Shown here one piece after another: positions 15,352-56,719 of a stretch of DNA of 64,000 nucleotides (positions are counted from its first letter, which is position 1; the number at the start of each line of letters is the position of its first letter). Source of the stretch: Haliotis rufescens (Eukaryota); the NCBI RefSeq assembly GCF_023055435.1, contig NW_025964383.1:13888001-13952000 (forward strand), given 5' to 3'. Under the pieces are notes generated by a model. It had not been told where the DNA came from and did not search any database. It was given only the letters and a program-made list of their open reading frames with translations. The position numbers and the translations under genes are program-made.

Positions 15352-18331
15352 ATGGAGCACACGCGCTGTCCGAACCGTGGACACCGAGCTGTCACAACAA
15401 TATGTATACTGACTTTAGTCATGTCAGCAGCATTGAACATACCCCTGATTGTTCTGCTTGTGCTGAATAAAGTCTCTCGCGGTCACAGCAACACTGCAGT
15501 CACAGAAGAAACAAAACACATTGGGCAAGGATCATTGTGTGTTCTCTGTGAAAGGGATAGGAGAGAGGAGCGTTCCTTGCCACCGTCCAAGGATGTAGAT
15601 GTGGTACATCTTCAGGGACGTCGGATGTGCTGTCTGAGACATGCTGGCGGCTTAACACATCTTGTTCAGCTTGTAAGTAAAGTGACAACTGTATTTAAAG
15701 TCATGTATTAGCAGCGAAATTCTATTTGAATTGATTAAAAGAAAGGTAACGTGTAATATCTTGAAACATGGCAAGTTAAATTGAGTGAGCTGCGTTTACG
15801 CTTCGTTGAGTGAATGAGTGAGTATGGTTTTACGCCGCTTAGTGCAATATTCCAGTAAAATCAGAAACGGGCTTCACTCATTGTGTTCATGTGGGGAATC
15901 GAAGGTGGGTGTTTGGCGTGAGCGAACGCTTTAACCACTAAGCTACGCCACCGCCCCAGTTCCGTTGAACAGTTTTTCAGGTGTAACACGGCGTGTCAGC
16001 TCAATGTGGGAGGAAAGTCCGAAGTGATGCAGGTCTCAGACGTTTGACACTTTGGAGAAATCCACATGCACCGGAATAGGGCTGACAAAACTAGAAACAT
16101 GATGAGAGCAAATCTGGAATTCGAATCAACTGTTGTGAAATACAACAGTTACCGATCTCCAACAACACTATTGCCTGATACACTCTCATCAATTTGATTT
16201 TCTTTGAATATTTCAGTGTTAAAAAGTCCAGAAATTGACCTTCCAATGTCACCATTAATGTCTGAAGATTTATTCTGTGAAAAGCATTATTAGAAGACCA
16301 ACTTGATGCAATTGTTACATGTTTAAGTTGTGAGCTTTGACGATCTAATTTATGAGAGAGGAATTGTATCGGTGTAAAATATTTGATTTTAATCAAATTG
16401 GTCCATGCTCGAAATTGGTCCATCAACATTTAAATGTTCTGATACATGGCGTATTTTAATGAGCATCCGTATTACAGATGTCAGGCTACTACTTTGAGCA
16501 TAGAGGATCCAAAACTGACTCGGGCAGGACACGACACTCTCACCAAAACGATGTCCAGCCTTACACTAGGCCCTCTGCCCACCTGTTCCTCGATCAGGGC
16601 GCATTCAAAGGTACGAATAGGTATAGGCCTGTCCAAAGTGTGAGTGAGTGAATGAGGTTTTACGCCGCTTTTAGCAATATTCCAGCAATATCACGGCGGG
16701 GGACACCAGTAATGGGCTTCACACATTGTACCCATGTCGGGGATCGAACCCGGGTCGTCGGCGTGACGAGCGAACGCTTTAACCACCAGGCTACCCGACC
16801 GCCCTGTCCAAATTGTGTTTTGTGGGAGAATGACAAGAGCTCTATAATGTTATTATGTTATTCTGTTTAAACCATAATGTTCCTCTCTGTTGGATAAATG
16901 TTCGTTTAACACTTGCTGTTAGCACTTTAGAATATCAGAGTACAACTCTGGGTACAATGTGTGAAGCGCATTTCTGGTGTCCCCCGCCCTGATATTGCTG
17001 GAACATTGCTAAAAGCGGCGTAAAAACAAACTCACTCACTCACTCAGGGTACAACTCTTTACCATTAATATAGTGTTCCCAGTTGTATTTACGCCGAAGT
17101 TCGGTAGTGTTTGTTTGTTTACTTGTTTGTTGTTTAACGCCGCATTCAGCAATATTATAGCTATATGATGACGGTCTGTAAATAATCGAGTCTGGACAAT
17201 CCAGTGATTGACACCATGAGCATCAATCTACGCAATTGGGATACGATGACATGTCGACAAGCACGGGTTGCTGAAGACCAATTCTAACTTGGATCTTCAC
17301 GGGTCTGTTCTGCAGTGATTTATCCATGCTTGCGGAAAAGAAATTCACGTATACCAGTTCTTTGTTTACGTTTCTAAGATTGTTTTCTTNNNNNNNNNNN
17401 NNNNNNNNNNNNNNNNNNNNNNNNNNNNNNNNNNNNNNNNNNNNNNNNNNNNNNNNNNNNNNNNNNNNNNNNNNNNNNNNNNNNNNNNNNNNNNNNNNNN
17501 NNNNNNNNNNNNNNNNNNTATCATTTTGCAACTCTGAGTTTCACGCACCCATGTTATTGCGTACGATTATCAGGCATAATGAAACATGGTTTTTAGTATG
17601 ACCCTTTTTTTTGCTCGGCTTGAGGGTTTACCATGGCGACAGGTGGAAATGCCTGATGATCGTACGCAATACCATGGGTGCGTGAAACTCAGAGTTGCAA
17701 AATGATATAAGGAAAGTGTATCCAAATCTGTATTTATGTTCTACTTTGTATTGAGCGCTCTCTTCTGCAATTGGATCATACTTGTGGGTATGTATGTATG
17801 TATGTATGTATGTATGTATGTATGTATTAAACGATAAACCAAAAATATAAAATCGAAAAAGCGGACATTTATTTCAGTAGCTGACATTACCATAATTGCC
17901 ATCATCATTTAAATACTGAATATATTGCAGGAACCCATCTTGTCTGGAGCACAAGGCCTGGTTTTGGAACTGCGCATGTAACTGGTGTCATAGTTATGGA
18001 AAATAACTCAATATTCGTACAAAAAGATGGTTTATATTTCGTATATTCCTCTCTGACGTTTACAGTACGTGATGGTGACATCACAAATGGATACGTGACA
18101 TATTCGTTATTACGCCACAATGCACGTTATTCCCCTGTGTCTGATATTTTACTGATAACAAATGTTACTCTTCCTCACAGAGAGAGACTTTTCACTGCAG
18201 CTACCTTAGAGGAAAACTTTTCCTTGCGGCAAGGAGATGTGCTATCCGTCCACCTATCTAACTATTCATATGTTTATCGGTTTTCTTCATCAAATTATTT
18301 TGGTGTTCGTCAGCTTAGCACGAAACTTTAA
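15352..18331 (+). CDS. TNF-superfamily ligand, copy 1 (type II membrane, 3 exons, ~284 aa)
   Basis: Exons 15352-15672 (TM + Cys stalk, donor gtaagt), 16478-16610 (..RPSAHLFLD, THD strand A), 17931-18331 (LVW..GFGTAH, DGLYFVYSSLTF, LRQGDVLSV, NYFGVRQL). 855 nt, phases 0/1 fit. The start ATG is the most plausible one but unproven. Confidence 0.9.
17390..17518. other. Assembly gap (one of seven)
   Basis: N runs at 17390-17518, 32281-32410, 34554-34721, 46681-46817, 52037-52175, 52252-52386 and 52444-52601. Confidence 0.99.
17519..17708. mobile_element. Inverted-repeat (MITE-like) element next to a gap, TNF copy 1 intron 2
   Basis: ~58-bp near-perfect inverted arms (tatcattttgcaactctgagtttcacgcaccc..) around a ~75-bp spacer. 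Confidence 0.6.
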
Positions 18332-19775
18332 TACACAGCTTTGTATATATCCAACGTACAGGAATTATGTCCGAAAAAATGAGAAATAAATAATATTGAA
18401 AAACATACAGCTGTTGTTTTATATATTTCTCTCAGATGATGAAAGTTTGTTTTGTGAAATTGGGTTTATGGTCGTATGCGGCCAAAAAAATAAAAACACT
18501 TGTCACGCAACAAACACTTCCTTCCTTCTGCAAACTGTGGCGGTGCTATCGGTAGGTTTACACCTGATGTCATTATTTGAATTTTAGTGATCCATTCACG
18601 TAAGTTTCACCGCTATTTGCATTTTACGCCCAATGGAATCTGTTTCTGCGGGTAAGGAAGATTGGTTATTCTCTATCGTTGACGGTTCACATTTCTACAC
18701 ACATATGGTAGTTTTTAATAATTTACGACTAGTTTACCAATCTCTCTGGTAAACCTTTTTTCATTTTTTTTGAAATAATTTTAGTTTCAGTAAGTACTGC
18801 TGAACTGGTGCAACAGCGTACTAAAAAAAAGAAACAAAAATAATTGCCACAAAAAGATTACAAAACAGTTCTCAAACTAATCGCAAAAACAGTAAGATAT
18901 TACACCAATATGTTTTGCCAAGAGAAACCCTCTTGGGGATGCCGGCAATGTGATACGTTTATCTTCTGTTATGCAATTGGCAATAATTCAGGAGGCCCGT
19001 GAAGATCCAGTGTAGAATAGGTCTTCAAACACCCATGCTTGTCGTTAAAAGGACACTATGGTTTTCGTAAGAGGAGACTAACGGGATCGGGTGGTCAGGC
19101 TCGCTTACTTGGTTGATGCATGTCATCGATCCCAATTGCGTGGATCGATGCTCATGATGTCAATCACTGGATTGTCTGGTCCAGACTCGATTATTTACAG
19201 ACCGCCGTCATATAGCTGGAATATTGCTGAGTGCGGTGTTAAACAACAAACAAACAATAATTCAGGTACACCAAGGCGGCATGTAAATTATCAAGTCTGG
19301 ATCAGACAAGCCAGTGATCAATTATATCACAGTAAGTTAGGGTTATGACGACCCCGCTTATAACGAACTGACGGATATAACGAACTTTTTAGTTCCGTCT
19401 ATTTGCTGTAGTTATGCTGTATATATGCTTATAACGAAATACGGCTATAACGAGCTAAAAAAGTAGTCCCTTGAGTTCGTTATAACCGTAGTTCGTTATA
19501 ACCGTAGTTTACTGTATTAGATATACTGATCACGCCGTAGCGTGACCCGCTATCAATCAGGTAACTGGGACAGGTTGCAGTGCGTCGATCAACTTTATCG
19601 ACATTTTGTTGACGGGTACTTTCCCTTCACTTGAACAAAGATACCTTATCGCACGACTGTCGTGTTAAACGTATGGGAGGTACAATCATTGTAACGCTAC
19701 TTTAACTTCAGTCCTTCGTCACTGGACACACGCTTCCGTGTTTGTTTTTATATTGTAATAAACTGCTGATATATG

Positions 19776-19912
19776 GTTGATAACATTGTTGAAGACTGCA
19801 ATGAACACTTAAGATATTTTATACGGGACACAGAGAGCGGAAAGGGTTTTCCGGTAACTGCAGGACGTTTTTACCCCTACATTACACAACTACCTGGTTA
19901 ATGGTGACTAAT
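19776..19912 (+). promoter_or_regulatory. Paralogous conserved non-coding block upstream of TNF copy 2
   Basis: Second copy of 13509-13645; contains the Rel-like GGGTTTTCC. Confidence 0.45.
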
Positions 19913-21486
19913 GCTGCCCTAATTCATTACAGGAAGAGATACACATCTATGATAGGTTTTCCAAAACTAGTGTTCCTCTTTTAGTGTATGAAGAGGAAGA
20001 ATACAACTTGTGTGTCAATGCAGGTATTTAAAAACTAATACTCTTTTAACTTGTGAGTCATGTATATCGCGTCAGCCCGTGAGGTGAGGTGAAATCGGGT
20101 TTAATATTTCAAGATTGATGCACTTATATAGCGACGTGCATGTGTGTGCGTGCGCGTGCGTTCATGCGTGTGGGTGCGTGCGTGTGGCTGTTTGTACTAT
20201 TCCGGACTAATACCGGTTTAGTCCACTTAGATACCATGCCGCATGTTTAACATTGATACCCCACTCAAATACAGTATACTGACTCCGAACCGACCAGTCC
20301 CTGCTCGATCCCTTCATACCGTGAGCGACCCGTGAAGATTCCGGGGTAGAACAGGTCTTCAGCAACCCATGCTTGTAAAAGGTGACTATACTTGTCGTAA
20401 AAGGCGACTACCGGGATCGGGTGGTAAGACTCGCTGACTTGGTTGATGCATGGCATCGATCCAAATTGCGGGGATCGATGCTCATGATATTAATCACTGG
20501 ATTGTCTGGTCCAGACTCGATTATTTACAGACCGCCGTCATATAGCTGGAATATTGCTGAGTGCGGCGTTAAACAACGAACCAACCAACCAATTGCAAAC
20601 CTTCATAACCTCCGAGAGCCATGCAGAGAAACAACAAGAACCACTTTTAACGTCTTTTGTTACGACCTTCCGCTCTCCGGAGTAATCGCTATAAATACTG
20701 GTAAGGCTTTTAAATAGTCAGGGGCGGGGGATGCATACACATAGGCGAGGACAGATTTCTATGAACTCGCTGCTTTCTTGTAATTCTTTTCACGGATATG
20801 ATTTACGCCTGAGGCTTTGACGTCGTGATACAAATAAATGAATAGAACCATTTCCATATTCTAAAGAAATCTGTACTAAAAGCAGATTCCATTGTACGAT
20901 TCCGACCCGTAATGGGATAACTTCAGACCTTTGTTTGGCGGAAGCTAAAACTAGGATTTGATTCTAAATAGATTAGGATAGGGCGTTCGCTCGTCACGCC
21001 GAAGACCTGGGTTCGATTCCCGACATGGGTACAATTTGTGAAGCCCATTACTGGTGTTCCTCGCCGTGATATTGCTGGAATATTGCTAAAAGCGGCGTAA
21101 AACAATACTCGCTTTCTCACTAATTAGATTGACTATTAGCATGTGTTTATGAATCACTACTAAATGGCGATTACACTCACGGGTCACGAAAACAATCACA
21201 GTATGCATTTACGAATGCATAGTATTACATATCAACCCGTGTAACTGAACTGCAAATACCCGCATTTATGGTGTCACTTAAAGCCCGGGTTGTGTAGTTA
21301 GTCTCGCCTCGGTCTCTCTATACGCGCTTTGAGGTCAGGCGAGATTCGTATCAAGTAAAGCTCACACAACGAACACAGACAAGACACTGTGCTACTTTGT
21401 ACGTAATCAATATGCGACATGAGTCGTGTAGTTCTGGGAAGCCAGCGTGTGTCTAAAATTATCCCATACAGTTAAAAACCCCGTCA

Positions 21487-21507
21487 ACCAGGATGTAGAT
21501 ATAAATA
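21487..21507 (+). promoter_or_regulatory. Candidate core promoter of TNF copy 2 (ETS-like ACCAGGATGT + TATA box)
   Basis: ACCAGGATGT 21487-21496 and TATAAATA 21500-21507, ~70 bp upstream of ATG 21572. Confidence 0.6.
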
Positions 21508-21571
21508 GACCCACGCAATACAAGGGGAAGTAACTCGCGCTTGACGAGGCACTACAAGCAGGAAACCCACG

Positions 21572-24500
21572 ATGTCTTCCTCTGTCTGTGAGAGGCTTCT
21601 CCCGAATGGATTCGACAGTTTTGGAAGAAAGAAAGTCAAGGTATTTACCACATCACACACCGGGGTCTATCAGCCTGTCGTGTGTCCAGACCCAACGAAG
21701 GGGATCGCCAGAAAACAGAACCAGCGGCCATCAACATGCCTTTGTGTCGTTGTCCTTTTGGTATCAGTGGCTATCAACGTTGCTTTAGTGAGTTGGTACA
21801 TGTACATAAGACTGAACGGGAATACGAACGCCGAGGTTCAGTTTGATGCTGATATGTCTAACTCTATATGCGTGAGGTGCGATTCTCTTCACCTCCCGGA
21901 ACCGGACAATTCGCCGTTAATATCAAAGGTCAAGGTCATAGATCTGGGTCAGAAATCCTCGTTGTGTTGCTTGCAGCATTCCGAACATCTACAAACTCTA
22001 CTCAACCTTGTAAGTATAATATATGCTCGCATCTATGTATATACATTAAGCAGAAGAGGTGAAATGGGGTTTAACGTCGCGTCCAAGATTATTGCACTTA
22101 TATAGCGACGTGCATGTACGTGTGTGTGTTTGTGTGGCTGTTTGTACTAGTCTGGACTGATGCCGATTTATAGTGCTAGCTCACTGAGATACCATGCCGC
22201 AGTTTAACATGAATACCCCTTCAGACACATTTTACTGACTCCGGGCCGACCAGTCCTTGTTTTAGCCCCTTATTGCCGAGCGCCAGACAGGGTAACAACT
22301 TGTACCATCTTTTAACGTCTTTTGGTATGACGCGGCCGGGGATCGAACCCCGGACCTTCCGCTCTCCGGGCGGACGCTCTACCACTAAACCACGGAGGTT
22401 ATATGCATAAGACTATATATGTACACAATGATTTCATATGTAGTATATAAAAAATAATCCAGGTGATCCTGGCTTCGTTTAAAACTTCAAGTAACATTCT
22501 CACTGTTATATTGGACGTAAGGACCGATCATTTGATATTCTAGGGAAGACCTGGGATTTTGCGTGGAGGATGGATATTATTTCAGCTGAAAAAAATCTAA
22601 ATATTGTTATCAGTGAGACATCTTGTTGCAACCTTTCCCACCCCACTCCCACCCGAGAATATATATTGGTCGGTCCCTAAGCCCTAAGGGATATATCAAA
22701 CACGAATGTTCCACTTTCGTTTCGACTGAGAAACTTTGTTGGCCTTGTCATACTCAGTATTCTACTTTCGTTTTATTCACAATTAAATACGTACGCGACT
22801 TGTCATTCTGAGTATTCTACATTCGTTTTATTCAATTAAATACGTACGTGACTTGTTATTGCCATTCTCACTATTCTGCTTTCGTTTTATTCAATTAAAT
22901 ACGTACGTGACATGTCATTGTCATACTCAGTATTCTACTTTCGTTTTATTTAATTAAATACGTACGTGACCTGTCATTGTCATACTCAGTATTCTACTTT
23001 CGTTTTATTAAATTAAATACGTACGTGACTTGTCATTGTTATTCTCACTATTCTGCTTTCGTTTTATTCAATTAAATACGTACGTGACTTGTCGTTGTCA
23101 TTCTAAGTATTCTACTTTAGTTTTATTAATTAAATACGTACGTGACTTGTCGTTATCGTTGTCTGTATATAGCTTCTCCTTTGTCTTTGTTTTGTATTTG
23201 TAAATTCTTTCGTGTATGAAATGTAACTGATCGTGATGTCCCCGTATATAACAGGTTGTAGGGGAGTACTATCACTACAGCCAGAGTGCCACGGGGACAG
23301 AAGCTTTCAGTCTCAGACCCAACAATTCTGCCCATCTTTACCTCGACGTACACAGAAATAAAGGTTTGTCATATGACTGGATTCTTGGACACTGTTTGTG
23401 TTGGAGATGAATAAAAGTCATCTCCATCATCATAAGAACTCTATCTCTGCTAAAAGAACACATTTTTTGTGGCATAATACAGTCAGCATGCATAATCTTG
23501 TTATGTTTGTGGTATAATATACAGTCAGTATGCATAATTACGTTATATTTGTCGTGGGATGGTGCAGATATTATTGATTTCCGTCTTCTTATTCTACAGC
23601 GTTATGATTGGTTTGTTTGTTTGTGGTTTAACGCCACATTCAGCAATATTCCAGCTATATGACGACGGTCTGTAAATGATCGAGTGTAGACCAGACAATC
23701 CAGTGATTGATATCATCAGCATCGATCCACGCAATTGGGATACCATGACATGGATAAACCATGTCGGCGAGCCTGACCACCCGATCCCGTTAGCGTTATG
23801 AAGCCATTTAAAATATGGAAATTCAATTACATGACGATATTCACAAAGGGGTTAAAATGACGTCACTATTGTTTCAACCGCAGATTATTTGCAGCGAATT
23901 CGCTGTTAATTGACCTACTTTCAGCTATGTAAGTGTTGGTTCAAATGCAGCACGGGCATCACAGAAAGAAGTTACAGATTCTCGTTCTTTTTTTAAGTTT
24001 TCGGCAAATCCGATTACGCAGTATTTTGTAACTTTAAAGCTGTATTTGAAATCGGCTAACGTAGTCGTTACTGATATTCGTTACAAATAATGATAGTCGC
24101 CTGTCTCGCTGATTTGAACATTATCCCAAACGGCGAGCCTAATGATGTGAGTTTGATTATTTTTGTTTTGTTTAACGCCGCACCCAGCAATATTTCAGCA
24201 ATAGGGCGATCTGTAGATAATCGAGTCTGGACCAGAAAAATCAGATATTAACATTGACCACCCGATCCCGTTGGTAGCCTCTTACGACAAGCATAGTCGC
24301 CTTTTACGGCAAGCATGAAGACCTCTTCTACCCAGGATATTCACTGGTCCATGGTGTACATGTAAGTATCCAATATAACAGAAATGATAACGATATATCA
24401 GAGCCTTTTTTAATCATTTAATTTTTATTTTTTAATATTACAGCAAATCATCGCTTGACGTGGGTTGTGGACACAGGCTTCGGAACGGCGCACACGACTG

Positions 24501-24829
24501 GTGGCGTGAGATATTCAAACGGTACACTGCGGGTACACCAAGATGGCGTCTACTTCCTGTACTCTCACGTGACCATCTCCCCTGACAACATCACAGATGG
24601 CCTTGACATTGTTCACTGTGTACAAAGGTATAATCCCCACTTGCCGCAGACTGGGAACCAGCTCCTTCTCATCAGTAAGATGTCGCTCAACAACCACGAG
24701 AGGAGAACGAGTTTCTTAGCAGCAAATCTCAAATTGCGACGACACGACGAAATATTCGTGGAATTCTCGGATCCATCGCTCGTGTACAACTTCTCACCAG
24801 CCAGCTATTTCGGGCTGCATCGTCTGTAG
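21572..24829 (+). CDS. TNF-superfamily ligand, copy 2 (3 exons, ~310 aa)
   Basis: Exons 21572-22009, 23255-23363 (..NSAHLYLD), 24444-24829 (LTW..GFGTAH, NGTLRVHQDGVYFLYSHVTI, LRRHDEIFV, SYFGLHRL). 933 nt in frame; TATAAATA at 21500. Confidence 0.93.
22518..22680. mobile_element. Short MITE-like element
   Basis: Ends taaggaccgatcatttgatatt / aatatatattggtcggtccctaa are imperfect TIRs; the same right end occurs at ~62675-62698. Confidence 0.5.
22746..23160. repeat. ~59-bp tandem repeat, ~7 copies, TNF copy 2 intron 1
   Basis: gtcatactcagtattctactttcgttttattcaattaaatacgtacgtgacttgtcatt units. Confidence 0.9.
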
Positions 24830-27498: not shown

Positions 27499-27499
27499 A

Positions 27500-29220: not shown

Positions 29221-32200
29221 ATGTCGGAATCGACAGGGTTCATTACAACCAACAGAGCTGATGTGCCCCTGTTTGGACCTGTGTGTGTCCGTGTCAGTGT
29301 GGTGGGATCCCTTCTTGTCAATGTAGCTGTTGTGACATTGGTGATCTTCTTCGTAGTGCTACAACATGATACAGATACGCCCCTACCCAATCCTGACACA
29401 GGCTCTGTGTGTTTTGTTTGCGATTATCTGGGTTCCGGGATCGAATCCCATGACACACTCTTCAGACTGGCCAAGGGAGGTAACCACACGTTTTGCTGCC
29501 TTAAAGAAAAGGATGAACTTACTCCTGCATTTGAACAGGTGTGTGTTTCTAGTTTGAATCGTATCCTATGTTTTTAGTTGGGTGATTGACTTGCCTTTGC
29601 ATATGTTTGTGACGCTCATATTTTCGAGGACACCTGGTATCACCATTTGATAATTATTAAACACATGCTCATGATATATTCGGAATCGTACATTCGAGTC
29701 TGCTTTTAACGGAGTTTTCTCTTATGAGCACTGAAAGAGTTTTGTCGTTTATATTTACAAAAGTTCACTGAATTTTTTAATTTTAAGAGTGTAAAGCGGA
29801 ATATATTATTGTATGTGTTCAAAACATGTTCCTACTGTATGGCGTCATAACATTTTGCAAATATTTACATCTCTGCTATCGATGCTCATGATGTCAATCA
29901 CTGGATTGTCTGGTTCAGACTCGATTATTTTACAGACCCCCGTCATATAGCTTGAATATTGCTGAGTGCGGCGTTAAAGAACAAACAAACAAACAAACAA
30001 ACATCTCTGCTGCACGGATGCATTTATCGCAACCCTGTTTATCGTGTTTATCAGTGTTGTATCTGTGCTTCGTGTTACAAGAAGGAAGTGATATCATGCG
30101 ATAGTAGTTGACATACGACACGACATAGATAAGTTATACACAACATCAACATGTCAGTTAATTATCTCACCTGACGTCAACGTCCGTAATCATATAGACG
30201 ACAGATACCTTTAACTTACTTAATTTTTAACTATTATGATTCTCAGGTGATTCTCTTTGCGCGTTAGCCGAGAATCTCTGCACTTGTACGCAGCAGGAGT
30301 TGAACGTTACCATATCGTTCTAAGTTTTCACCAAAGTGCATAACTTCGGGCGTTGCTCCCACAGGAAGCCCTGACTTGATACAACTGACATACTGTTCAA
30401 AGCGGCGGTTTTGTTTGTTTGTTGTTTAACGCCGCACTCAGCAATATTTCAGCTATATGACGGCGGTCTGAAAGTAATCGAGTCTGGAACAGACAATTCA
30501 GTGATTGATGTCATGAGCATCGATCCACGCAATTGGGATACGATGACATGCATCAACCAAGTCAGCGAGCCTGACAACCCAATCCTGTTAGTCGCCTCTT
30601 ACGACAAGCATAGTCACCATTTATGGCAAGTATGGGTTGCTGAAGACCCATTCTAGCCCGGATCTATACGGGTAGACAAGCATGGGTTTTTGAAGACCTA
30701 TTCTAACCCGGATCTTCACGGGTCTCAAAGCGGCGGTAAACCAATAAATAAAAAGGTAACGCCAGAGAACAAAAAGTCTCGATTAAATGGAAACTGCCGT
30801 GCGTTTAACGATCATGAATGTTTTAATAGTTTAGTGTCACAACTCACAACTATTATGAGGAGCTTTCGGGTAGTCTAGTGGTTAAAGCGTTCGCTCGTCA
30901 CGCCGAAGACCCGGGTTCGATTCCCGACATGGGTACAGAGCGTAAAGCCCATTTCTGGTGTCCCCCGCCGTGATATTGCTGGATTATTGCTAAAAGCGGC
31001 GTAAAACCATACTCACTTACTCACAACTACTATGACTATTTGTGTTTATGTAACAGATTAAACGATTTTACCAACAAAAGATCACACGCATTGTAGCAAC
31101 ATCGGAGGTACTATTAGAAATAATAATTTGTTTACCAATGTATTTTTATAAGATAAGTGTATTAAGTCATTTCTATATGTCTGCAACATAAGCCAGATTG
31201 TTAATATTGTTTTCGCAGATGGCTAAAGCTATATATAAAGGAAAAGGTATGTAAAAATAAATACTCACGCCAATATAAAATTATTAATTATTTTCTATAT
31301 GATATAGCAAGAATTTTTTTATTATCTCTTACAAAATTATTTAATGATCTTGTGAACCAGACCATGATTCACGGCGTATAAAAATAAATTCAGATTAATA
31401 TTTGTAAAAATAATTCACGAACTTTGTTGTCAGAAGACATATTTGAGAAAAACTATCCCACGATTATTCTTCCTGGTCTAAAGGACAAAATCATGTTTGA
31501 AGGTGACTATGGTTCTCACTATCTGTCTACCCGTAAAGATCCGGGGTAGAATAGGTCTTCAGCAACCCATGCTTGCCGTAAAAGGTGACTATGCTTGTCG
31601 TAAGAGGAGACTAACGGGATCGGGTGGTCAGGCTCGCTGACTTTGTTGATGCATGTCATCGTATCCCAATTGCGTGGATCGATGCTCATGATGTCAATCC
31701 CTGTGTTGTCTGGCCCAGAATCGACTTTTTACAGATTGCCGTCATATAACTGGAATATTGCTGAGTGCGGCGTTAAACAACAAACAAACAAACAACCAAA
31801 CAAACAAAACTACCTGTCTGTTACAGCGGATGCTCCTCTCACTCCCAGTGTCGCCGCCCCGTGGATGAGGGGTGCCACTGGAGCACTTCTGTATCTGGAC
31901 CCGGCAGCAATAAATGGTTTGTTTCTATGGTTACCATACCTGTTTCTTCTCATTAGCGATGCATTACGAGGGTATTAATCACCAGACGGAAAACAAACAT
32001 AATAGGTTTTGTATGCAACTCAACTGACGGGGAAAGAAAGTATTTACCCAAGTTTGGCGGTGGCTAAAATAAAAACAAAAACAAGAAATGGTTATTCGAT
32101 GGTGATATATTTGATGCGGGTACCATAGTTATGTTTTGGACCTTACGTTTGCTGTGTTGTTTCGGCGACTGTTTTCAGACTATTAACGCTGTGATAACGT

Positions 32201-33766
32201 TTGTAATTGTTTGGTCAACTCCATTTTTCAACTGTATACTTTCATTTGCCCATCAGTTTATAAAAAAAGCAAAAAAAACCNNNNNNNNNNNNNNNNNNNN
32301 NNNNNNNNNNNNNNNNNNNNNNNNNNNNNNNNNNNNNNNNNNNNNNNNNNNNNNNNNNNNNNNNNNNNNNNNNNNNNNNNNNNNNNNNNNNNNNNNNNNN
32401 NNNNNNNNNNTTTGAATGTTACAACGCATTCATAGGTCCCGGTAACAAATTACCGTTGCTGAGCAGGTTGAGTCATGATTTTCTACCAAAGAGACACCCA
32501 TGACGTACGGCTTTGGTATTGAAGTATTCTTTAAATAGAATCCATTCATAAAACTATGTTATTTCTTCAGATATTATTTGATACACACACGTGGCTATAA
32601 ATAGTACTCCTTCTTCCCGGCGTCGGTGTCTTCGTGACCACGATCGTACCTGACGCTTCCTTGTTCAACACTGAATGATCCTTGTTGGTACCGTTTCATT
32701 GTGTCATGAAAAATTCCAAGTACTACGTACACTACTCAATGTAATGTTCCGGGAATGGTAAAACCAGGAAGTCTTGTAGATACAGTAAACGGGTATGGTT
32801 GCGGAATGGTTGCATTCAGAAATGGGTGAGTATGGTTTTACGCCGCTTTTAGCAATATTCCAGCAATATCACGGCGGGGGACACCAGAAATGGGCTTCAC
32901 ACATTGTACCCATGTCGGGAATCGAACCCGGGTCTTCGGCGTGACGAGCGAACGCTTTAACCACAAGGTTACCCGACCGCCCCGCATTCAGAAATGACGT
33001 TTGAAATCGGTACTGTCAGGATCCTTGCGGGGAGGATGTGATCACGTTTCTGATGCGATAGGTATGTTTGGAGCGTTCGGGGGAAATATGAACACATTTA
33101 GATAAAAATCGCCAGAAAATAATCAGATTCGATTATCTGCCGAAACAAATTCTATTGGGCGTAAAAGGCAAAATAGTGAAAGTATTTTTTTAAAATTAAA
33201 AACAAATGGCCCTAAAATCTTCCGTAGATATCTTGACAGCATCTGTGGTGTTCTTTTATGTCAGAACATGGTCGCTTATTTCTGGTCGCTAAATGGCTGA
33301 AACATTGTCGATGCAACTTTAATGCTTAACTCACTCTTTAATAAAAATTAATTTTGAGACATTTCATATTTTCGTTTCAGGCTCCACGCTGACCTGGAAT
33401 GACCGAGGACGGAACAACTTCGCCTTCATGTCTGGCGTTGAGTATCGAGATCGCAAAATACACATACCGTCGAATGGTCGATATCACGTATATTCCCACG
33501 TGACTTACAAGCAGAATAAGGACACATATGGTTGCAAGACGTTCTTGCATCAGATTACCCGTGAACACCCGAGACAGCCGAAGTTAGGGGAGGTCACTCT
33601 TCTGGTTACCAAGAATAGCTACTCGACACATGAGATATATCAATCCAGCTTCCTGTCAGCCATCTTGGTCATGCGCAAAAATGACCGAATCGCCGTCAAT
33701 GTTTCTGATGTCTTATCAGTTCACAAACAGTCCTCGCTTACATTTTTCGGTGTAAGGAAACTTTAG
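29221..33766 (+). CDS. TNF-superfamily ligand, copy 3 (4 exons incl. 28-nt micro-exon, ~273 aa)
   Basis: Exons 29221-29538, 31219-31246 (MAKAIYKGK), 31827-31916 (..GALLYLD), 33381-33766 (LTW, GRYHVYSHVTY, SSFLSAILVMRKNDRIAVNVS, TFFGVRKL). 822 nt, phases 0/1/1 fit. An N-gap lies in intron 3. Confidence 0.88.
31529..31808 (+). mobile_element. Short retroposon family B (~280 bp, non-tRNA structured head, (AAAC)n tail), in TNF copy 3 intron 2
   Basis: acccgtgaagatccggggtagaataggtcttcagc..gtcgtaagaggcgactaacggg..gagtgcggcgttaaac(aaac)n; TSD actatctgtct/actacctgtct. Other copies: ~10877-11146(+), 12823-13000(+), 13686-14168(-, split), 17108-17305(-), 18996-19255(+), 20327-20592(+), 23608-23793(-), 24160-24350(-), 29877-30003(+), 30408-30724(-), 43367-43581(+), 44290-44537(-), 50052-50238(-), 51341-51611(+), 53938-54186(+), 55523-55694(+), 58430-58695(-), 61370-61638(-), 63643-63891(-). 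Confidence 0.9.
32825..32983 (-). mobile_element. SINE family A copy
   Basis: Full consensus match, flanked by 13-bp TSD gcattcagaaatg. Confidence 0.9.
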
Positions 33767-45600: not shown

Positions 45601-46296
45601 ATGATGGCAGAACCTGACTCCACCTTCATATCCACTGACACAGCAACGTCACCGCCTCCACCTTCCCAACAACGACGACGTCGTACCAATGTGTTGTTCT
45701 ATGCCGTTGTCGCCATTTCTCTGACTGCCAATGTTATCCTCGTTGTGGTAGTGACTTTCCACATGTTAATAAAACAACGTGGACATCACCACAAAAGTGA
45801 GGGTTTATCCTCCATGTCGAATCACCAGCTTGGGTTTGCTGATCCACTATGTCTCACCTGTGATCAATTGGGTCCGCTGGTCGAATCCCAGGATACGATC
45901 TATGACGTCATACGATTGCCGTTGGGACATACGCTGTGTTGTCAGAAACAGAGGAATGACGTCACAAAGTTATTCCATAAGGTAATTAGACGCTAGCATT
46001 ATACACATGACATTCTATTTTACTTATTTACCATTTTATGTTGATGAAAATATTATCATGATCAGTTGCGATACCCATATATATCAAGAGAGTGACAGAT
46101 TTTTTAATGTGTTAAATTGGGACAGGATACGCTCATATTTTCGCGAACACACGGTATCCTCAGTATCCATTCATTAACACATGCTTATTATTATACTACT
46201 CAGAATCGTACTATGGGCCCCGCTCTAAGGAGGGATTTCTTATGATTATGGTGAGGTAAAACGTCGCGTCAAAGGTTATTGCACTTATACGGCGAC

Positions 46297-46832: not shown

Positions 46833-46899
<67 letters not shown>

Positions 46900-46964: not shown

Positions 46965-46996
<32 letters not shown>

Positions 46997-47105: not shown

Positions 47106-47166
<61 letters not shown>

Positions 47167-49250
47167 AGGAATGTTGTGGAATTTGTATTCGTTTTGCCAG
47201 ACGTGTCGTTTGTGACGTGGAGCATTGCGGGTTTTCTCAACACTTGTCAGTACTTATAGAATTACATCCGTGCTGCTGCGATCGATTACTATATCGTGGA
47301 GGGTTGTGTGTCAGGCTAGGTGGCCTGGTTGATTGCGTGTCATCGTACCCCGACGACGTGGATAGTTGCTCACACTACCAATCACTGGCTTGTATTACAC
47401 ACACCGCCGTCATATAGGTGAAATATTGCTGAGTGCGGCGTTAAGCAACAAACAAACAAATAGTGTTCGCGGTCGGGTAGCGCTTTCATTTAAGGAACCG
47501 CAATTTTATCATTAACTGAGATGCGTCTCTTCCTATGGCAGGATTTGATCGCGGGTTCGAATCCAGATAGTGACCCTTAACAAGGTCGAACATCATAACT
47601 GTTTCCGACTTGAGGCGTTGTGTGGATTTCTCATATTCAGCTGACGCTCTGTGATATCACTTCCCGTGGCCTTTCTGTCAGTATAGACAACAGGCTAGAA
47701 CGCCAGCTTCTCTTTGAATGGTACAAATTGTAGGAGCTTTGAAAACACACAGTCATTTGATTTCTTCACGTGTCTCATTCTTGTTTCAGATAATAGGTGA
47801 TGAATACTACAGACGGTCTACAGGTACGCCAATGATTTATTTATTTATTATTCATGATATTCAGTTAAGATCCTTCATGTTGTATGTAACCTAAACCCAC
47901 GGTGTTTCCATAATCAGTTCTTCTTCCAAATTCAGCTACAACGTATTTGCACCAAATCAAATTACCTTCTTTGATAATGTAAACACACACAGCAATGCAT
48001 TTTCCTTCTGATTTAATTATTTGACCTGACCGTGGTCAAGTGGGAGAGCGTCTGCTCGGAGAACTTTTTACGAAAAGACGTTAAAAGATGGTACTTGTTG
48101 TTACCCTGTCTGGCGTTCGACATTAAGGGGCTAAAACAAGGACTGGTCGGCTCGGAATCAGTATACTGTGGGGTATTCATGTTAAACCGCGGCAAGGTAT
48201 CTCAGTGTGCTAGCACTATAAATCGGCATCAGTCCGGACTACAGTGTAGTACAAGTAGCCACACACACGCACGCACGCACGCACGCACGCTCGCACGCAC
48301 GTCGCTCTATAGTTGCAATAATCTTGGACGCGACGTTAAACCCCATTTCATCTCACCATTATTTAACCTACTCGTGTTAATCTCTCTCTTGTATGCAATT
48401 GTTGTTACTGTTAATCCCCCACCTTCTATATATATCCTGTATCATGTTAAGTAATTAGCCTTGCTCGACAACGGTATAATGATCTGTACCGACACGTCGC
48501 CTCTACAGTAAGGAAATAACCATAAATTGTATCTAATTTCCCACTTCAGGTAGGGAGCCAGTTGGCCTCACCAGGGGGATGAATGAGCAGATATGGAGTC
48601 GTCCCAGGGAGTCGACGTGGGCTCATCGGTACATGGTGCCACACACAGGTAATGTACGACATTAAGAGTGTAGATAATGTTTTACGCCGCAGATAACAAA
48701 TTCCGTCGTTCATCCCAGTGGTTAATATTTTTTTCTATGTGATAATTTCAAATTCTCACAGTCACATATGCCCTTAAATATAACAAACAGTTCTTGTAAT
48801 GATGCATCAGTATATAATTTTTGCTTTGTTATTAATTCATAACGTGTTATGTGTACAGATTCGCCGCCAGCATGGACAACGAGCGATCCCTACAACACGT
48901 CATTCTGTTCAAACGTCGAATGTAACGGAACAGACATTGTTGTCTCAGCAGGGGGTCTCTACCTCGTGTACTCACACATCACATTCATCACGTCACCAGC
49001 TCCTTCAGACACCCCCTTCCTGCACATGATACAGCGACAGAACCCCAATCTCCCTGGTCTGGGTGTGAAACCAATACTCTTATCTAAAACGTCATTCAGA
49101 TGGACAGTAGCTCCGCAGCAAACGTCCTTTCTGTCCGCCATTGTGAAGCTCCGCAGACAAGATCGCCTCCATGTGAAAATGTCGGAAAATTATTATGATT
49201 TAGTTGAAAAAAGGATGCTTTCAAATTTTTTTGGTGTTATGAAAGTGTAA
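45601..49250 (+). CDS. TNF-superfamily ligand, copy 4 (4 exons incl. 34-nt micro-exon, ~301 aa)
   Basis: Exons 45601-45981, 47790-47823 (IIGDEYYRRST), 48550-48648 (..WAHRYM), 48859-49250 (GGLYLVYSHITF, TSFLSAIVKLRRQDRLHV, NFFGVMKV). 906 nt, phases 0/1/1 fit. Confidence 0.88.
46818..47166. repeat. (AGT)n microsatellite
   Basis: Imperfect trinucleotide run after an N-gap, in TNF copy 4 intron 1. Confidence 0.95.
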
Positions 49251-52175: not shown

Positions 52176-52636
52176 TACGTAGGAAGGAAGGAAGGAAGGA
52201 AGGAAGGTAGGTGTGTAGGTAGGTAGGTAGGTGTGTAGCTGGATGGGTAAGNNNNNNNNNNNNNNNNNNNNNNNNNNNNNNNNNNNNNNNNNNNNNNNNN
52301 NNNNNNNNNNNNNNNNNNNNNNNNNNNNNNNNNNNNNNNNNNNNNNNNNNNNNNNNNNNNNNNNNNNNNNNNNNNNNNNNNNNNNNGTGGGTAGGTGAGT
52401 AGGTGGGTGGGTAGGTGGGTAGGTGGATAGGTGGGTGGGTAGGNNNNNNNNNNNNNNNNNNNNNNNNNNNNNNNNNNNNNNNNNNNNNNNNNNNNNNNNN
52501 NNNNNNNNNNNNNNNNNNNNNNNNNNNNNNNNNNNNNNNNNNNNNNNNNNNNNNNNNNNNNNNNNNNNNNNNNNNNNNNNNNNNNNNNNNNNNNNNNNNN
52601 NGGAGGGCGGGTGGGTGGGTGGGTGGGTGGGTTGGT
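52176..52636. repeat. (GGAA)/(GGTA)/(GGGT)n tetranucleotide region broken by gaps
   Basis: Visible runs between three N blocks. Confidence 0.85.
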
Positions 52637-53341: not shown

Positions 53342-56300
53342 ATGGTTTGGTTAACTCAAAACTCATCTCTCAAAAATAACCTCCTAAAGACAAAAGTACA
53401 TCTGATGGACGGTACTGATCATTACAATGACCCGACATATTTACATGTTAGTCATATCAACAAAGATCGCGCCGATCAAAAAATGAAGAAAAAACGACCA
53501 AGGAACAAAGAGAAAAGCAACAAAAAAGAAAAACAATGTGGATTGAAAAAACAACGTTTGGGCGTGGTCGTCCTGTTGTTGTCTATGTGTGTTAACATCA
53601 TACTCGGGATTGTATTGGTGCTGTCGATACCGATATATGGAATGTCTCATAAGTCCATCCTGGAAGTCTTGGACGTTTCAGAAGATCTCAGCACGTGTGT
53701 TTGCGTCTTGTGTTCAAGTCTTGGTATCAATGCCGAGGATGGGGCGATGAATGGACGGAAGGATGTCATTGTCATCAACATGTCACAACACTCCTTCTGT
53801 TGTCTCAGGAACACTGGCTATTTGCAAACACTAATTACAGTGGTAAGTACAACAACAGCATCAAAATGTTTACTTTTAAGCATAAACAATCTTATACTTG
53901 TTGATTACACCTTAACAATGGGATTCACGTTTAAGATACCCGAGAAGATCTGGGGAAGAATAGGTCTTCAGCAACCCATGCTTGCCGTAAAAGGTGACTA
54001 TGCCTGTCGTAAAAGGCGACTTATGGGATCGGGTGGTCAGGGTCGCTTACTTGGTTGATGCATGTCATCGATCCCAATTGCGTAGATCGATGCTCATGAT
54101 GTCAATCACTGGATTGTCTGGTCCAGACTCGATTATTTACAGTCCGCCGTCATATAGCTAAATATTGCAGAGTACGTTAAACAACACATATGAAGTTTAT
54201 GTTTGTAGATAAATAAACGCGACAACACCCTTTTTTATTATCATAAGAAATCTCTGCTAAAAGCAGTGTTCATTGTATGATGATATAACTTATGATTCCT
54301 AAGATAGTATTTTAAAATGTCAATGTGTCATGTGAACATATTTTTCAACACATATGCGTTACAAATAACGACAATGTGGACTGATTATAAACGAACACAA
54401 ATTCACATCCTCCACCTGTCGATCACGTGTCTCATAATTCAACAGCGTCTAAATAAAAGATTGGCTAGACATATTTCAATTCAAAGGCACTTGAAAAGAC
54501 GCAAACAATAGAAGGACTGGTATTTAACTCAGTAAAAGTGATATTAAGAAATTAAAGGAGGTATTTATAATTCTACATTTCTAAGAATGCACTGGCTTGT
54601 TTGTCCATCTTCAAGTATCCTGGGCCGATCTGTTTACATCAACAAAGAAACTCCCATCTTCCTTTGTGAAAGCTGAGCCGATGTGCAGCTGCCATAGCGT
54701 GTTATCGTTACATCGCTTCAGCGTCCACGAAAACTCGCTGTGTCTCATTATAGACCTTCATAGTGAGTGAGTGAGTGAGTGAGTATGGCTTTACGCCGCT
54801 TTTAGCAATATTGCAGCAATATCACGGCGGGGACACCAGAAATGGGCTTCACACATTGCACCCATATCGGGAATCGAACCTAGGTCTTCGGCGTTACGAG
54901 CGAACGCTTTAACCACTGGGCTACCCGACCGACCCTTAATGTTAATAGAACCTTGCGTGTTTTTTTTATATTCAATGAAATTTTCTTTCATCTTTTTAAT
55001 GTCATGCCGAACAAATTTCCCCAAAGCGGTCGATTAAATCATATACGTCCGCCTGTACTTTAATCCCTGCATACATCCGCATGTTTATCATCCATCCATC
55101 TTCCATCCATTATATCTACCATCCATCACATCTTCCAGCAACATATATCCATAATCTATCATTTATACTTTTTCATCCATCATCCACGTCTCTTAACTAT
55201 CATCTGTCCGACATTTCATATTTTATCCATCATCCATCATCCATCCGTAATCAAGCCGCCCTTCAACCCATCCATCATCCATCGTCAGTATATCCATCAT
55301 CTATCCATCATGCCAGACGCCATCTATCTTCGGGCACAAGGGTGGCCCAGCCGTCTTAGGCGCCTCAATTCGCTGTGCAGAGTTTCGTCCCTTTGGTATC
55401 GTGGATTCGGTTCGCCCGGATTGAATTTATTTTCGTAGGTTTGTCAACAACATGCCCGTGATCGTTGGTTTCTCAAAAGTTTGAAACGTCTCAGACATGC
55501 ATCCTTTCCCTCCCACATTAAGAGGCGACTAACGAGATCGAGTGGTCAGGCCTAGGCTCGCTGACTTGGTTGATGCATGTCATCGATCCCATTTGCGTGG
55601 ATCGATGCTCATGATATTAATCATTGGATTGTCTGGTCCAGACTCTATTATTTACAGACCGCCGTCATATAGCGTTAAACAAGAAAGAAACCAACCCACA
55701 TCAAGCTGACACACCGCGATACAACTGGAATACTGTTCAAAGCGGCGTTAAACCCAACTCACGCACTCATCTATCATCATGCATTATCCATCAGCCGTCT
55801 GACAGCCCATCCATCTATATTAATATCAGATCAAGTCGGAAAAAAGTTCAATGCGCATGACCATGTATGTGCAAATATTACCCATCATACGTATATGTAT
55901 TTAAATGTATGTTTGTCCATTAATGATATCCGCGTCCTTCCTTACTTCAGTGTCACATGTGTGTAGTTTTCAGCTCAGTTCGGGGACCATGAAGATATGG
56001 CAAGGAATGACACCAAACCGGTGTTAACAGTCCCGCAGCAAATCAAACATGGCGCTCACTTATTTCTGGATAGAAGTTATCTGAAAGGTAATTCTTAATA
56101 CACTTACATGATCACTAAACAATAAAGTAAATAAATGTCGAATGATTTCTTAATGTCTTCAAAGACTCCGAATAAAATTTTGACCGCAGTAGAGCCTGCA
56201 AGTACTTCTCATTCAATCTGAACTAAATTCACTAATATCAAGTTTATAACCATATCTTAATAATTAAAGTTAATATTTGTGAAGACGTTTACAGTAAAAC

Positions 56301-56719
56301 GCTGACCACTCCACATTGCAGATGACAAGCTGGTCTGGACCACTGATTTTGGGTACGGGTGTGCATACATTGGACACGGCATGGCGATGGACAGCGGGAG
56401 ATTACAGATCAAACAAGATGGAAGATACTTCCTCTACTCCTTCTTCACGCTAAAAACTCGCGAGACTACCAACGAGAGCCATAACGCTCTTCACACAGTC
56501 ACCCGTTATAACCCAAGGTTTCCAGAGCTGAAGAACCAGCTTCTCCTGTTTAGCAAACAAAGTCTCGCGAGAGAAAGCGAGAAGTTCGCCACGACCTATC
56601 TCGGAGCGTCATTGGTTCTGAGGAAAGGAGATGAATTGTGGGTACGAGCTGAACCCGTTTCAGCAGTGTATGCTTTCGCACCATCTAACTATTTTGGCCT
56701 GTTCAAGCTAGACAGCTGA
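53342..56719 (+). CDS. TNF-superfamily ligand, copy 5 (probably 3 exons, ~318-339 aa)
   Basis: Exon 1 from ATG 53342 or 53405 to 53842 (donor gtaagt). Exon 2 ~55967-56087 (..HGAHLFLD; acceptor ambiguous, 55967/55974/55979). Exon 3 56322-56719 (LVW..GYGCAY, DGRYFLYSFFTL, LRKGDELWV, NYFGLFKL). Confidence 0.88.

What the first reader, a model, noticed from the sequence alone, without database searches (positions are those of the whole stretch)
15352..56719. Tandem array of five intact, deeply diverged TNF-ligand genes with a shared non-vertebrate architecture
Seen: five same-strand genes splice into uninterrupted type II TM + stalk + THD proteins, with conserved intron positions (phase 0 after the stalk, phase 1 after THD strand A) despite low visible identity. 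Established: TNFSF ligands are trimeric type II proteins, often tandemly arrayed, and expanded in molluscs. Inference: an old, selectively retained cytokine cluster whose members have different tails and promoters, i.e. a diversified invertebrate TNF signalling locus rather than recent copies.
Basis: partly seen in the sequence, partly recalled or inferred. Interest (0 to 1): 0.8.

Follow-up and report, generated by a model that had tools for sequence, protein, structure and literature searches.

The report
Diverged TNF ligand array in abalone
Five neighbouring red-abalone genes each encode a membrane-anchored TNF-type signalling protein; they are real, spliced as predicted and old duplicates, but they belong to a known mollusc gene-family expansion and at least four are already in the public annotation.

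Summary
Observation confirmed. The window is Haliotis rufescens, contig C605:13.888-13.952 Mb. Five plus-strand genes each have a variable tail, one TM helix, a stalk with an invariant CxxC...CC module, a short strand-A exon and a large last exon that passes Pfam TNF (46-60 bits, cut-off 23). The phase-0 intron after the stalk and the phase-1 intron after strand A occur in all five. Genes 3 and 4 have one further phase-1 intron, giving four coding exons rather than three. All assembly gaps lie in introns or between genes. RNA-type contigs from three to four studies join gene 1's exons exactly as predicted, across its gap. NCBI proteins match my models for genes 2-5.

The copies are old. THD identity is 26-43% among the five. 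Orthologues exist in H. rubra, H. asinina and H. cracherodii, with gene numbering in H. rubra that suggests the same order. Orthologue THDs (76-80%) are better kept than tails (47-57%). Gene 1 shows no clear constraint (dN/dS about 0.6-0.7, few sites).

The five are part of eight contiguous genes (ten nearby) among at least 82 THD matches genome-wide. The scan earlier found another TNF-ligand cluster about 3.7 Mb away on this contig. Mollusc TNFSF expansion in tandem is published, so interest is modest. The "non-vertebrate" label fits the cysteine stalk but probably not the introns.

The parts
15352..15672 (+). Gene 1 exon 1: short tail, TM helix, stalk with CxxC...CC module. An in-frame ATG also lies at 15304. 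Phase-0 donor CTT|GTAAGT.
   Evidence: The joint 15672>16478 is seen in spliced contigs of 3 runs.
16478..16610 (+). Gene 1 exon 2: linker and THD strand A (SAHLFLD); phase-1 donor.
   Evidence: Both junctions are seen in contigs.
17931..18331 (+). Gene 1 exon 3: rest of the THD and stop codon.
   Evidence: Pfam TNF 49 bits. The joint 16610>17931 (GT..AG) is seen in 4 runs and spans the gap at 17390-17518.
21572..22009 (+). Gene 2 exon 1: 54-aa tail, TM helix, Cys stalk module.
   Evidence: Matches NCBI protein P0012 (310 aa, 'TNF ligand superfamily member 11-like'). A 1224-nt contig lies on 21539-21624 and runs past the end of the laid stretch.
23255..23363 (+). Gene 2 exon 2: linker and strand A (SAHLYLD).
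   Evidence: The junction sequence is identical in P0012.
24444..24829 (+). Gene 2 exon 3: THD.
   Evidence: Pfam TNF 55.1 bits. The AF2 model of P0012 has pLDDT about 80-94 here, and its best fold match is FasL with TM 0.81-0.87.
29221..29538 (+). Gene 3 exon 1: tail, TM helix, Cys stalk; phase-0 donor CAG|GTGTGT.
   Evidence: Matches NCBI P0004 (273 aa, 'tumor necrosis factor-like').
31219..31246 (+). Gene 3 mini-exon (MAKAIYKGK plus 1 nt), running from phase 0 to phase 1.
31827..31916 (+). Gene 3 strand-A exon (variant GALLYLD); phase 1 on both sides, so skipping it stays in frame.
   Evidence: H. cracherodii isoform X2 (P0007) lacks this exon.
33381..33766 (+). Gene 3 last exon: THD.
   Evidence: Pfam TNF 59.7 bits.
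45601..45981 (+). Gene 4 exon 1: tail, TM helix, Cys stalk.
   Evidence: Matches NCBI P0006 (301 aa, LOC124125200).
47790..47823 (+). Gene 4 mini-exon (IIGDEYYRRST plus 1 nt).
48550..48648 (+). Gene 4 strand-A exon (diverged: WAHRYMV).
   Evidence: The sequence is conserved in H. rubra and H. asinina orthologues.
48859..49250 (+). Gene 4 last exon: THD.
   Evidence: Pfam TNF 46 bits.
53342..53842 (+). Gene 5 exon 1: 74-aa lysine-rich tail, TM helix, Cys stalk.
   Evidence: Matches NCBI P0001 (339 aa, LOC124125202).
55967..56087 (+). Gene 5 exon 2: linker and strand A (GAHLFLD).
56322..56719 (+). Gene 5 last exon: THD.
   Evidence: Pfam TNF 52.7 bits.

Best explanation
The interval holds five functional-looking genes of the TNF ligand superfamily in Haliotis rufescens. 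They are the central part of an old tandem array: eight contiguous same-strand genes, with two more 60-70 kb upstream beyond an FMO gene.

Each gene encodes a type II membrane protein. The parts in order are a variable cytoplasmic tail, one TM helix with a conserved Ser-x3-Asn, an extracellular stalk with four invariant cysteines (CxxC...CC), a linker, and a TNF homology domain of the conventional FasL/TL1A/TRAIL/TNF type.

Shown here: THD family membership, the jelly-roll fold (gene 2), the exon structure, splicing of gene 1, the age of the duplications, and orthologues in congeners.

Inferred from the family: the proteins form trimers through the THD, are displayed on the cell or shed from the stalk, and cluster TNFR-type receptors to drive TRAF, NF-kB, JNK or apoptosis signalling. 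The diverged THD surfaces and tails would give the paralogues different receptor preferences, regulation or reverse signalling.
For: - Pfam TNF on all five last exons, 46-60 bits against a cut-off of 23.
- A profile of ten array THDs hits solved FasL (1e-18), TL1A, TRAIL, LIGHT, LT-alpha and TNF.
- The AF2 model of the gene 2 protein has THD pLDDT about 80-94. Its best fold matches are FasL (TM 0.81-0.87, rmsd 2.0-2.2 A) and TNF.
- Each exon 1 has a single TM segment with positive-inside charge bias.
- Donors and acceptors are conserved in phase and position.
- Spliced contigs from 3-4 studies show gene 1's two junctions, with near-zero depth over unique intron sequence.
- NCBI proteins are identical to my exon models for genes 2-5.
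- Paralogue THD identity is 26-43%. In genes 4 and 5, orthologue THDs are 76-80% identical against 47-57% for the tails.
- In the genome-wide THD tree the array members sit on long branches, in contrast with the recent clusters.
- TNFR cysteine-rich domains are present at about eight loci in the genome.
Against: - No functional, trimerisation or receptor-binding data exist.
- Junction-level RNA evidence was obtained only for gene 1. For gene 2 only the 5' end was covered.
- The runs are labelled 'RNA? (a guess)', although spliced GT..AG joints and empty introns argue for RNA.
- The models for genes 3-5 are NCBI predictions whose evidence I could not inspect.
- Gene 1's variants are mostly nonsynonymous (dN/dS about 0.6-0.7, not different from 1), and it sits on the longest branch in the array.
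- An immune role is assumed from oyster work and was not shown here.
Confidence: 0.87

Rival explanations
1. Gene 1, and possibly others, is transcribed but under relaxed constraint. It would be a decaying or non-essential copy rather than a selectively retained ligand.
For: - Gene 1's variants in the THD exon are mostly nonsynonymous: 8 of 11 changed positions (7 nonsynonymous codons to 3 synonymous) within the species label, and 6 of 9 against the second organism label. dN/dS is 0.62-0.73, not different from neutral.
- It has the longest terminal branch in the array, 1.0, and its best identity to any THD in the genome is 38%.
- I recovered no NCBI protein or orthologue for it.
Against: - Its frame is intact over three exons, with canonical splice sites and conserved THD core residues.
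- It is spliced correctly in four runs from four studies, including the second organism label.
- The same word search also missed gene 2, which does have an NCBI protein. Absence from that search therefore means little.
- The sample of 9-11 variants is too small to tell relaxation from diversifying selection.
Confidence: 0.2
2. The five genes are recent tandem copies or an assembly artefact such as collapsed or duplicated haplotigs stitched across gaps.
For: The interval has several assembly gaps. Elsewhere in the genome there are near-identical THD copies, on C168, C580 and C32.
Against: - THD identity is only 26-43% between the five.
- Genes 2, 3, 4 and 5 each have their own orthologue in other Haliotis species, and the H. 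rubra LOC numbers run 365, 366, 367, 369 on one contig.
- The gaps lie in introns or intergenic DNA.
- A spliced transcript spans gene 1's gap.
Confidence: 0.02
3. The genes are true TNFSF ligands, but their main roles are not immune cytokine signalling. They would serve development, tissue remodelling, apoptosis or abiotic-stress signalling, as Eiger and EDA do, or as some oyster TNFs do when they respond to air exposure and heat.
For: Oyster TNF paralogues respond to air exposure, to temperature and during development as well as to Vibrio (PMC4346834). Gene 1 and gene 2 transcripts are present in unselected transcriptome-type runs from several studies.
Against: Nothing here speaks against it, because no expression profile by tissue or challenge was available. 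The first mollusc TNF, from Haliotis discus, was pathogen-induced (cited in 10.1101/2024.07.27.603686).
Confidence: 0.3

Closest known systems
Vertebrate conventional TNFSF ligands (FasL/TNFSF6, TL1A/TNFSF15, TRAIL/TNFSF10, TNF, LT-alpha)
   Same: - Type II layout with a C-terminal THD.
- Best sequence-profile and fold matches.
- Conserved core motifs G-x-Y-x-x-Y-S and F-F-G.
- A large last exon holds most of the THD. From my own knowledge, human TNF has four exons with intron phases 0, 1, 1, as genes 3 and 4 do.
   Different: - Only 20-29% identity in structural alignment.
- There is no one-to-one orthology. NCBI's 'member 11-like' name for gene 2 is not borne out, since RANKL ranks below FasL, TL1A and TRAIL.
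- The stalk carries an invariant CxxC...CC module and the TM a Ser-x3-Asn motif. Neither is known to me in vertebrate ligands.
Oyster (Crassostrea gigas) TNF expansion in tandem pairs and triples
   Same: Lineage-specific expansion of TNF ligands in a mollusc by local tandem duplication with diverged paralogues (PMC4346834; Gao et al. 2015, cited and not read).
   Different: The run here is longer: eight contiguous genes, ten nearby. The genome total is much larger, at least 82 THD matches, against a maximum of 27 paralogues in a recent invertebrate survey (10.1101/2024.07.27.603686).
Other TNF clusters of the same abalone genome (C605 about 10 Mb, C556 about 36.3-36.6 Mb, C168 3.5-5 Mb)
   Same: Same family, with the THD encoded in a single large last exon. 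The C168 copies fall in the same major clade as this array.
   Different: The C605 10-Mb and C556 clusters are recent, with tip branches about 0.03, and form the other major clade. This array's members are far older, with branches of 0.25-1.0.
Mya arenaria 'TNFL6-like protein' (P0011)
   Same: The same four invariant stalk cysteines upstream of the THD, so the module predates the gastropod-bivalve split.
   Different: It is 20% identical to gene 2's protein overall, with a much longer tail and a longer stalk. MAFFT does not align its strand-A segment (SAHLQAG) with the abalone AHLYL motif.

Membership tests
TNF ligand superfamily (Pfam PF00229) | TNF homology domain scoring above the curated family threshold | tested here: met
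   The five last exons score 49, 55.1, 59.7, 46 and 52.7 bits against a cut-off of 23. The genome scan agrees.
TNF ligand superfamily (Pfam PF00229) | Beta jelly-roll THD fold | tested here: met
   Tested on the gene 2 protein only. The AF2 THD has pLDDT about 80-94. Foldseek gives FasL at E 5e-12, TM 0.81-0.87, rmsd 2.0-2.2 A, followed by TNF and TL1A. Genes 1, 3, 4 and 5 were not folded.
TNF ligand superfamily (Pfam PF00229) | Type II membrane topology: one N-proximal TM anchor with the THD at the C-terminus | tested here: met
   There is one 19-aa segment with mean hydropathy 2.5-3.0, preceded by 18-74 aa, with more K/R on the N side. AF2 models a helix at 55-83 in gene 2. Topology is predicted, not measured, and no signal-peptide predictor was run.
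TNF ligand superfamily (Pfam PF00229) | Homotrimer assembly through the THD | not testable with these tools
   Only indirect evidence: the core aromatic and hydrophobic positions (G-x-Y-x-x-Y-S, F-F-G) are invariant.
TNF ligand superfamily (Pfam PF00229) | Binding to TNFR-type cysteine-rich-domain receptors | not testable with these tools
   Candidate receptors exist: 11 PF00020 matches at about eight loci. PF09305 and PF09257 gave no match at E<=0.001. No pairing can be inferred.
C1q domain family (Pfam PF00386) | C1q domain above the family threshold | tested here: not met
   Only gene 5 gives a weak hit, 13 bits against a cut-off of 23.7, E 0.12. TNF scores far higher.
Orthologue of vertebrate RANKL/TNFSF11 (NCBI's name for gene 2) | Closest specific relationship to TNFSF11 | tested here: not met
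   The array profile ranks FasL (1e-18), TL1A (2e-16) and TRAIL (1.5e-13) ahead of RANKL (2.5e-10). No phylogeny with vertebrate sequences was built.

The most novel reading that the evidence does not exclude
The invariant extracellular CxxC-(24-28 aa)-CC stalk module, together with the near-invariant Ser-x3-Asn in the TM helix, may be an undescribed mollusc or lophotrochozoan TNFSF device. It would lock or register the trimer through disulfides and polar TM contacts, and so control shedding or membrane-bound signalling. Vertebrate ligands would lack it. In addition, the symmetric phase-1 strand-A exon of genes 3 and 4 could allow regulated exon skipping, giving a THD without strand A, as in the H. 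cracherodii isoform X2.
Probability: 0.25. Interest if true: 0.5.

Novelty: new member of a known kind. Interest (0 to 1): 0.3.

Why it matters
The locus is a clean, well-delimited example of an old, diversified TNF-ligand array in a gastropod, next to much younger TNF clusters in the same genome. That makes it useful for asking how ligand repertoires diversify in animals without adaptive immunity. It also bears on abalone health work such as withering syndrome, Vibrio infection and heat stress.

It does not change the current picture. TNFSF expansion by tandem duplication in molluscs is published, and at least four of the five genes are already RefSeq models.

The points that go beyond the literature I read are threefold. 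The abalone repertoire is large, with at least 82 THD matches. The cysteine stalk module is conserved and is shared with a bivalve. The intron pattern looks like that of vertebrate TNF.

Tried and rejected
- Strand-A pattern and small HMM. A simple AH[LVI] pattern and an HMM built from the three obvious middle exons found no middle exon in genes 3 and 4. I briefly considered that these exons lay inside the assembly gaps or that gene 3 used a phase-1 donor in exon 1. NCBI proteins then showed an extra mini-exon and diverged strand A sequences (GALLYLD, WAHRYMV), so both ideas were dropped.
As a result I had no gene tables around the locus and no congener DNA, so no codon-level dN/dS for genes 2-5.
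- The alignment-seeded word search missed gene 2's NCBI protein, which a direct search found. Its silence on gene 1 is therefore not evidence of absence.
- Pfam on the exon-1 peptides gave nothing.
- ESM Atlas on the TM, stalk and linker part gave only a weak lead (0.78) to a mollusc TNF cluster.
- AF2 models the stalk module at pLDDT about 50-60 only, so I draw no structural conclusion from it.
- Papers on TNF intron phases could not be found. The vertebrate comparison of phases rests on my own knowledge.
- PF09305 and PF09257 scans for BCMA/TACI-type receptors found nothing at E<=0.001.
- The large representative protein search was not used, because the family scans settled the identity.
- My own spliced models were never joined for a search or a fold. 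Exons were searched one by one, and full-length work used only database proteins returned by the tools.
Full report
WHAT THE WINDOW IS. The window is G000:C605:13,888,001-13,952,000 of a 1.33-Gb eukaryotic assembly. Database proteins identical to its exons are labelled Haliotis rufescens, the red abalone.

THE OBSERVATION. An ORF listing shows five pairs of plus-strand ORFs: an N-terminal ORF with a hydrophobic stretch, followed 2-4 kb downstream by a C-terminal ORF. Searched exon by exon, all five C-terminal ORFs pass Pfam TNF (PF00229) at 46-59.7 bits against a cut-off of 23. The only competing hit is a sub-threshold C1q match for gene 5. The N-terminal ORFs match no Pfam family.

The N-terminal ORFs do share an obvious motif, C-x2-C, then 24-28 residues, then CC. 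A GT donor lies exactly 15 codons after the CC in every gene, in phase 0. Every last exon has a polypyrimidine-AG acceptor 4-5 codons before the conserved Trp, in phase 1.

THE MIDDLE EXONS. Genes 1, 2 and 5 have one middle exon ending '...AHL[FY]LD....K|GT' in phase 1. A small HMM found the same exon in all five flanking array genes but not in genes 3 and 4. NCBI proteins resolved this. Gene 3 (P0004, 273 aa) and gene 4 (P0006, 301 aa) have a 28- or 34-nt mini-exon, then a strand-A exon with a diverged motif (GALLYLD in gene 3, WAHRYMV in gene 4). The extra intron is phase 1. The upstream paralogue up2 has the same phase-1 acceptor as gene 3.

Gene 5 (P0001, 339 aa) and gene 2 (P0012, 310 aa, named 'TNF ligand superfamily member 11-like') match my three-exon models residue for residue. 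All 17 exons have canonical splice sites and every model is in frame.

ASSEMBLY GAPS. Three gaps fall in introns: gene 1 intron 2, gene 3 intron 3 and gene 4 intron 1. The others, including one at 52444-52601 that the program did not list, are intergenic. I did not fill or look up any gap. For gene 1, spliced contigs bridge the gap-bearing intron (next paragraph). For genes 3 and 4, the NCBI proteins are collinear with orthologues from other species' assemblies, with no segment missing at the junctions.

RNA EVIDENCE. One run search and one read-laying run were available. I placed the 6-kb stretch at 15625-21624, over gene 1's junctions and the start of gene 2. Contigs from runs of four studies were laid. 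The joint 15672>16478 (GT..AG) appears in three runs. The joint 16610>17931 (reported as 16608>17929, 'cut +2', GT..AG) appears in all four, including the run with a second organism label. Single contigs of 673-1067 nt carry exon 2 joined to exon 3 (table 8), and the exon 1-exon 2 joint is recorded once per run in three runs (table 5). Unique intron bins have depth of about 0-3, against 15-74 for the exon contigs. The tool labels these runs 'RNA? (a guess)'; exact GT..AG joints with empty introns argue that they are RNA. A 1224-nt contig begins 33 nt upstream of gene 2's ATG and runs off the stretch, so gene 2 is transcribed, but its junctions were not seen directly.

PROTEIN ANATOMY. Each exon 1 has one 19-residue segment of mean hydropathy 2.5-3.0. 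It is preceded by 18, 54, 26, 34 and 74 residues in genes 1-5, with more K/R before it than after, which fits a type II orientation. In an alignment of 13 full-length database proteins (abalone paralogues, orthologues and a Mya arenaria protein) the four stalk cysteines are invariant, and a Ser and an Asn four residues apart in the TM helix are nearly invariant.

The AF2 model of the gene 2 protein gives a confident THD (pLDDT about 80-94) and TM helix. The stalk module reaches only pLDDT about 50-60. Foldseek puts FasL first (TM 0.81-0.87, rmsd 2.0-2.2 A, 28-29% identity), then TNF and TL1A. A sequence profile of ten array THDs gives the same order: FasL, TL1A, TRAIL, LIGHT, LT-alpha, TNF, RANKL, CD40L. 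These are conventional TNFSF ligands. NCBI's 'member 11-like' label is a naming convenience, not orthology.

SURROUNDINGS AND AGE. The genome has at least 82 THD matches. On the same strand of the same contig there are two more upstream of the window (13.817 and 13.828 Mb) and three downstream (13.956, 13.964 and 13.975 Mb). All have the same exon 1 module, strand-A exon and last exon. An FMO gene at window 7.8-11.9 kb and about 60 kb without THD matches separate the upstream pair from a contiguous run of eight genes.

A maximum-likelihood tree of 66 near-full-length THD exons splits the repertoire into two major groups (SH-aLRT 97). This array falls with copies on C168, C580 and C32 and has terminal branches of 0.25-1.0. 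The large clusters at C605 about 10 Mb and C556 about 36.3-36.6 Mb have tips near 0.03 and are recent.

THD identity among the five window genes is 26-43%. Orthologues of gene 5 (H. rubra, H. asinina), gene 4 (both), gene 3 (H. cracherodii) and gene 2 (H. rubra, H. asinina) were recovered. The H. rubra genes carry LOC numbers ...365 (downstream neighbour), 366 (gene 5), 367 (gene 4) and 369 (gene 2) on one 1.24-Mb contig, which suggests that gene order is conserved. The duplications therefore predate the split of these Haliotis lineages.

SELECTION. Indirect evidence favours constraint. All frames are intact despite about 30% identity. Orthologue identity is graded: THD 76-80%, Cys stalk 62-67%, tail 47-57% for genes 4 and 5.

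For gene 1, the variants carried by the laid contigs give nonsynonymous to synonymous counts of 7:3 within the species label and 6:3 against the second label. dN/dS is 0.73 and 0.62, and neither differs from the neutral share of 0.76. Gene 1 also has the longest branch in the array. It may be under relaxed or diversifying selection, and the data cannot tell which.

HOW IT MOST LIKELY WORKS. Shown: five spliced or annotated genes encoding type II proteins with a bona fide THD. Inferred from the family: trimerisation through the THD, display on the membrane or release by cleavage in the stalk or linker, and clustering of TNFR-type receptors. PF00020 domains occur at about eight loci. The diverged THD surfaces and tails would give the paralogues different receptor preference and regulation. 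The four stalk cysteines lie outside the cell and so probably form disulfides. Whether these are within a chain or between chains is unknown.

COMPARISON WITH WHAT IS KNOWN. Expansion of TNF ligands in molluscs, their arrangement in tandem pairs or triples and their varied responses to biotic and abiotic stress are published for the oyster (PMC4346834). A recent invertebrate survey reports up to 27 paralogues in a mollusc and cites the first mollusc TNF from Haliotis discus (10.1101/2024.07.27.603686). This scan has already reported another TNF-ligand cluster 3.66 Mb upstream on the same contig (s1-805551), which my tree shows to be a recent expansion.

The finding is therefore a new, older and more diverged member of a known kind. 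On 'non-vertebrate architecture': human TNF has four exons (PMC7985780). From my own knowledge, not tested here, its intron phases are 0, 1, 1, with the last intron a few residues after strand A. That is the pattern of genes 3 and 4, although the exact residue position appears to differ by about five residues. The intron logic thus looks shared with vertebrates, and the cysteine stalk is the part without a vertebrate counterpart known to me.

LIMITS. Junction-level RNA evidence covers gene 1 only. No promoter, expression-profile, receptor or trimer data exist. No vertebrate sequences were placed in a tree. The distribution of the stalk module beyond one bivalve was not tested. 

Noticed in passing
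window 37284-42300: A 5-kb minisatellite between genes 3 and 4: 30-bp unit, 167 copies, 87% matches. It is strongly strand-asymmetric (GC skew about -0.6) and produces long spurious ORFs on both strands.
   Followed up: partly
window 26945-28392: Two adjoining tandem-repeat blocks upstream of gene 3, with 33/64/129-bp units and 65/80-bp units. They underlie a proline-rich 381-aa ORF at 27475-28620 that is probably not a gene.
   Followed up: partly
window 7792-11931 (+): Four exon-like ORFs match Pfam FMO-like (PF00743), covering profile positions 65-523. This flavin monooxygenase gene sits between the two upstream TNF genes and the run of eight.
   Followed up: partly
window 16625-16824, 19025-19224, 20425-20624 (also 31.6, 47.4 and 54.0 kb): Interspersed repeat copies in TNF introns and spacers attract contig depth of 1e5-7e5 in every run laid, so they belong to a very abundant, transcribed repeat family. 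One recurring element translates as '...[31 protein letters not shown]...'; another has a tRNA-like tail.
   Followed up: no
G000:C168:3.51-4.96 Mb (L026, L033-L034, L037-L038, L040, L048-L050, L052-L055, L060, L062): A three-gene TNF unit recurs four to five times with identical or nearly identical THD exons. This is either a very recent segmental duplication or an assembly redundancy. One member type is gene 4's closest paralogue, at 67% identity.
   Followed up: partly
G000:C580:36873-37250, C580:347174-347551, C32:144516-144893 against L001:7412-7792: THD exons nearly identical to the array's first upstream gene (branch lengths 0-0.045) lie on small contigs. They may be haplotigs or very recent copies.
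   Followed up: no
P0007 (H. cracherodii isoform X2) against window 31827-31916: An annotated isoform of the gene 3 orthologue skips the strand-A exon. The skip stays in frame because both flanking introns are phase 1, and the product would be a THD without strand A.
   Followed up: no
window 52444-52601 and 46820-47166: There is a further assembly gap at 52444-52601 that the program's note does not list. It lies between genes 4 and 5 in low-complexity DNA. An (AGT)n microsatellite of about 116 copies directly follows the gap in gene 4's first intron.
   Followed up: yes
P0013 (Logan-derived, 167 aa, 989-nt contig): A public-run contig encodes gene 2's exon 1 at 91% identity, with a 5-residue insertion. 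It reads on into the intron, so it is an unspliced or intron-retaining transcript, or genomic DNA, of an allele or sister species.
   Followed up: no
whole genome G000: There are at least 82 THD matches but only 11 PF00020 TNFR cysteine-rich-domain matches, at about eight loci. Classical receptors look far fewer than ligands. Both figures are lower bounds from short exon-wise matches.
   Followed up: partly
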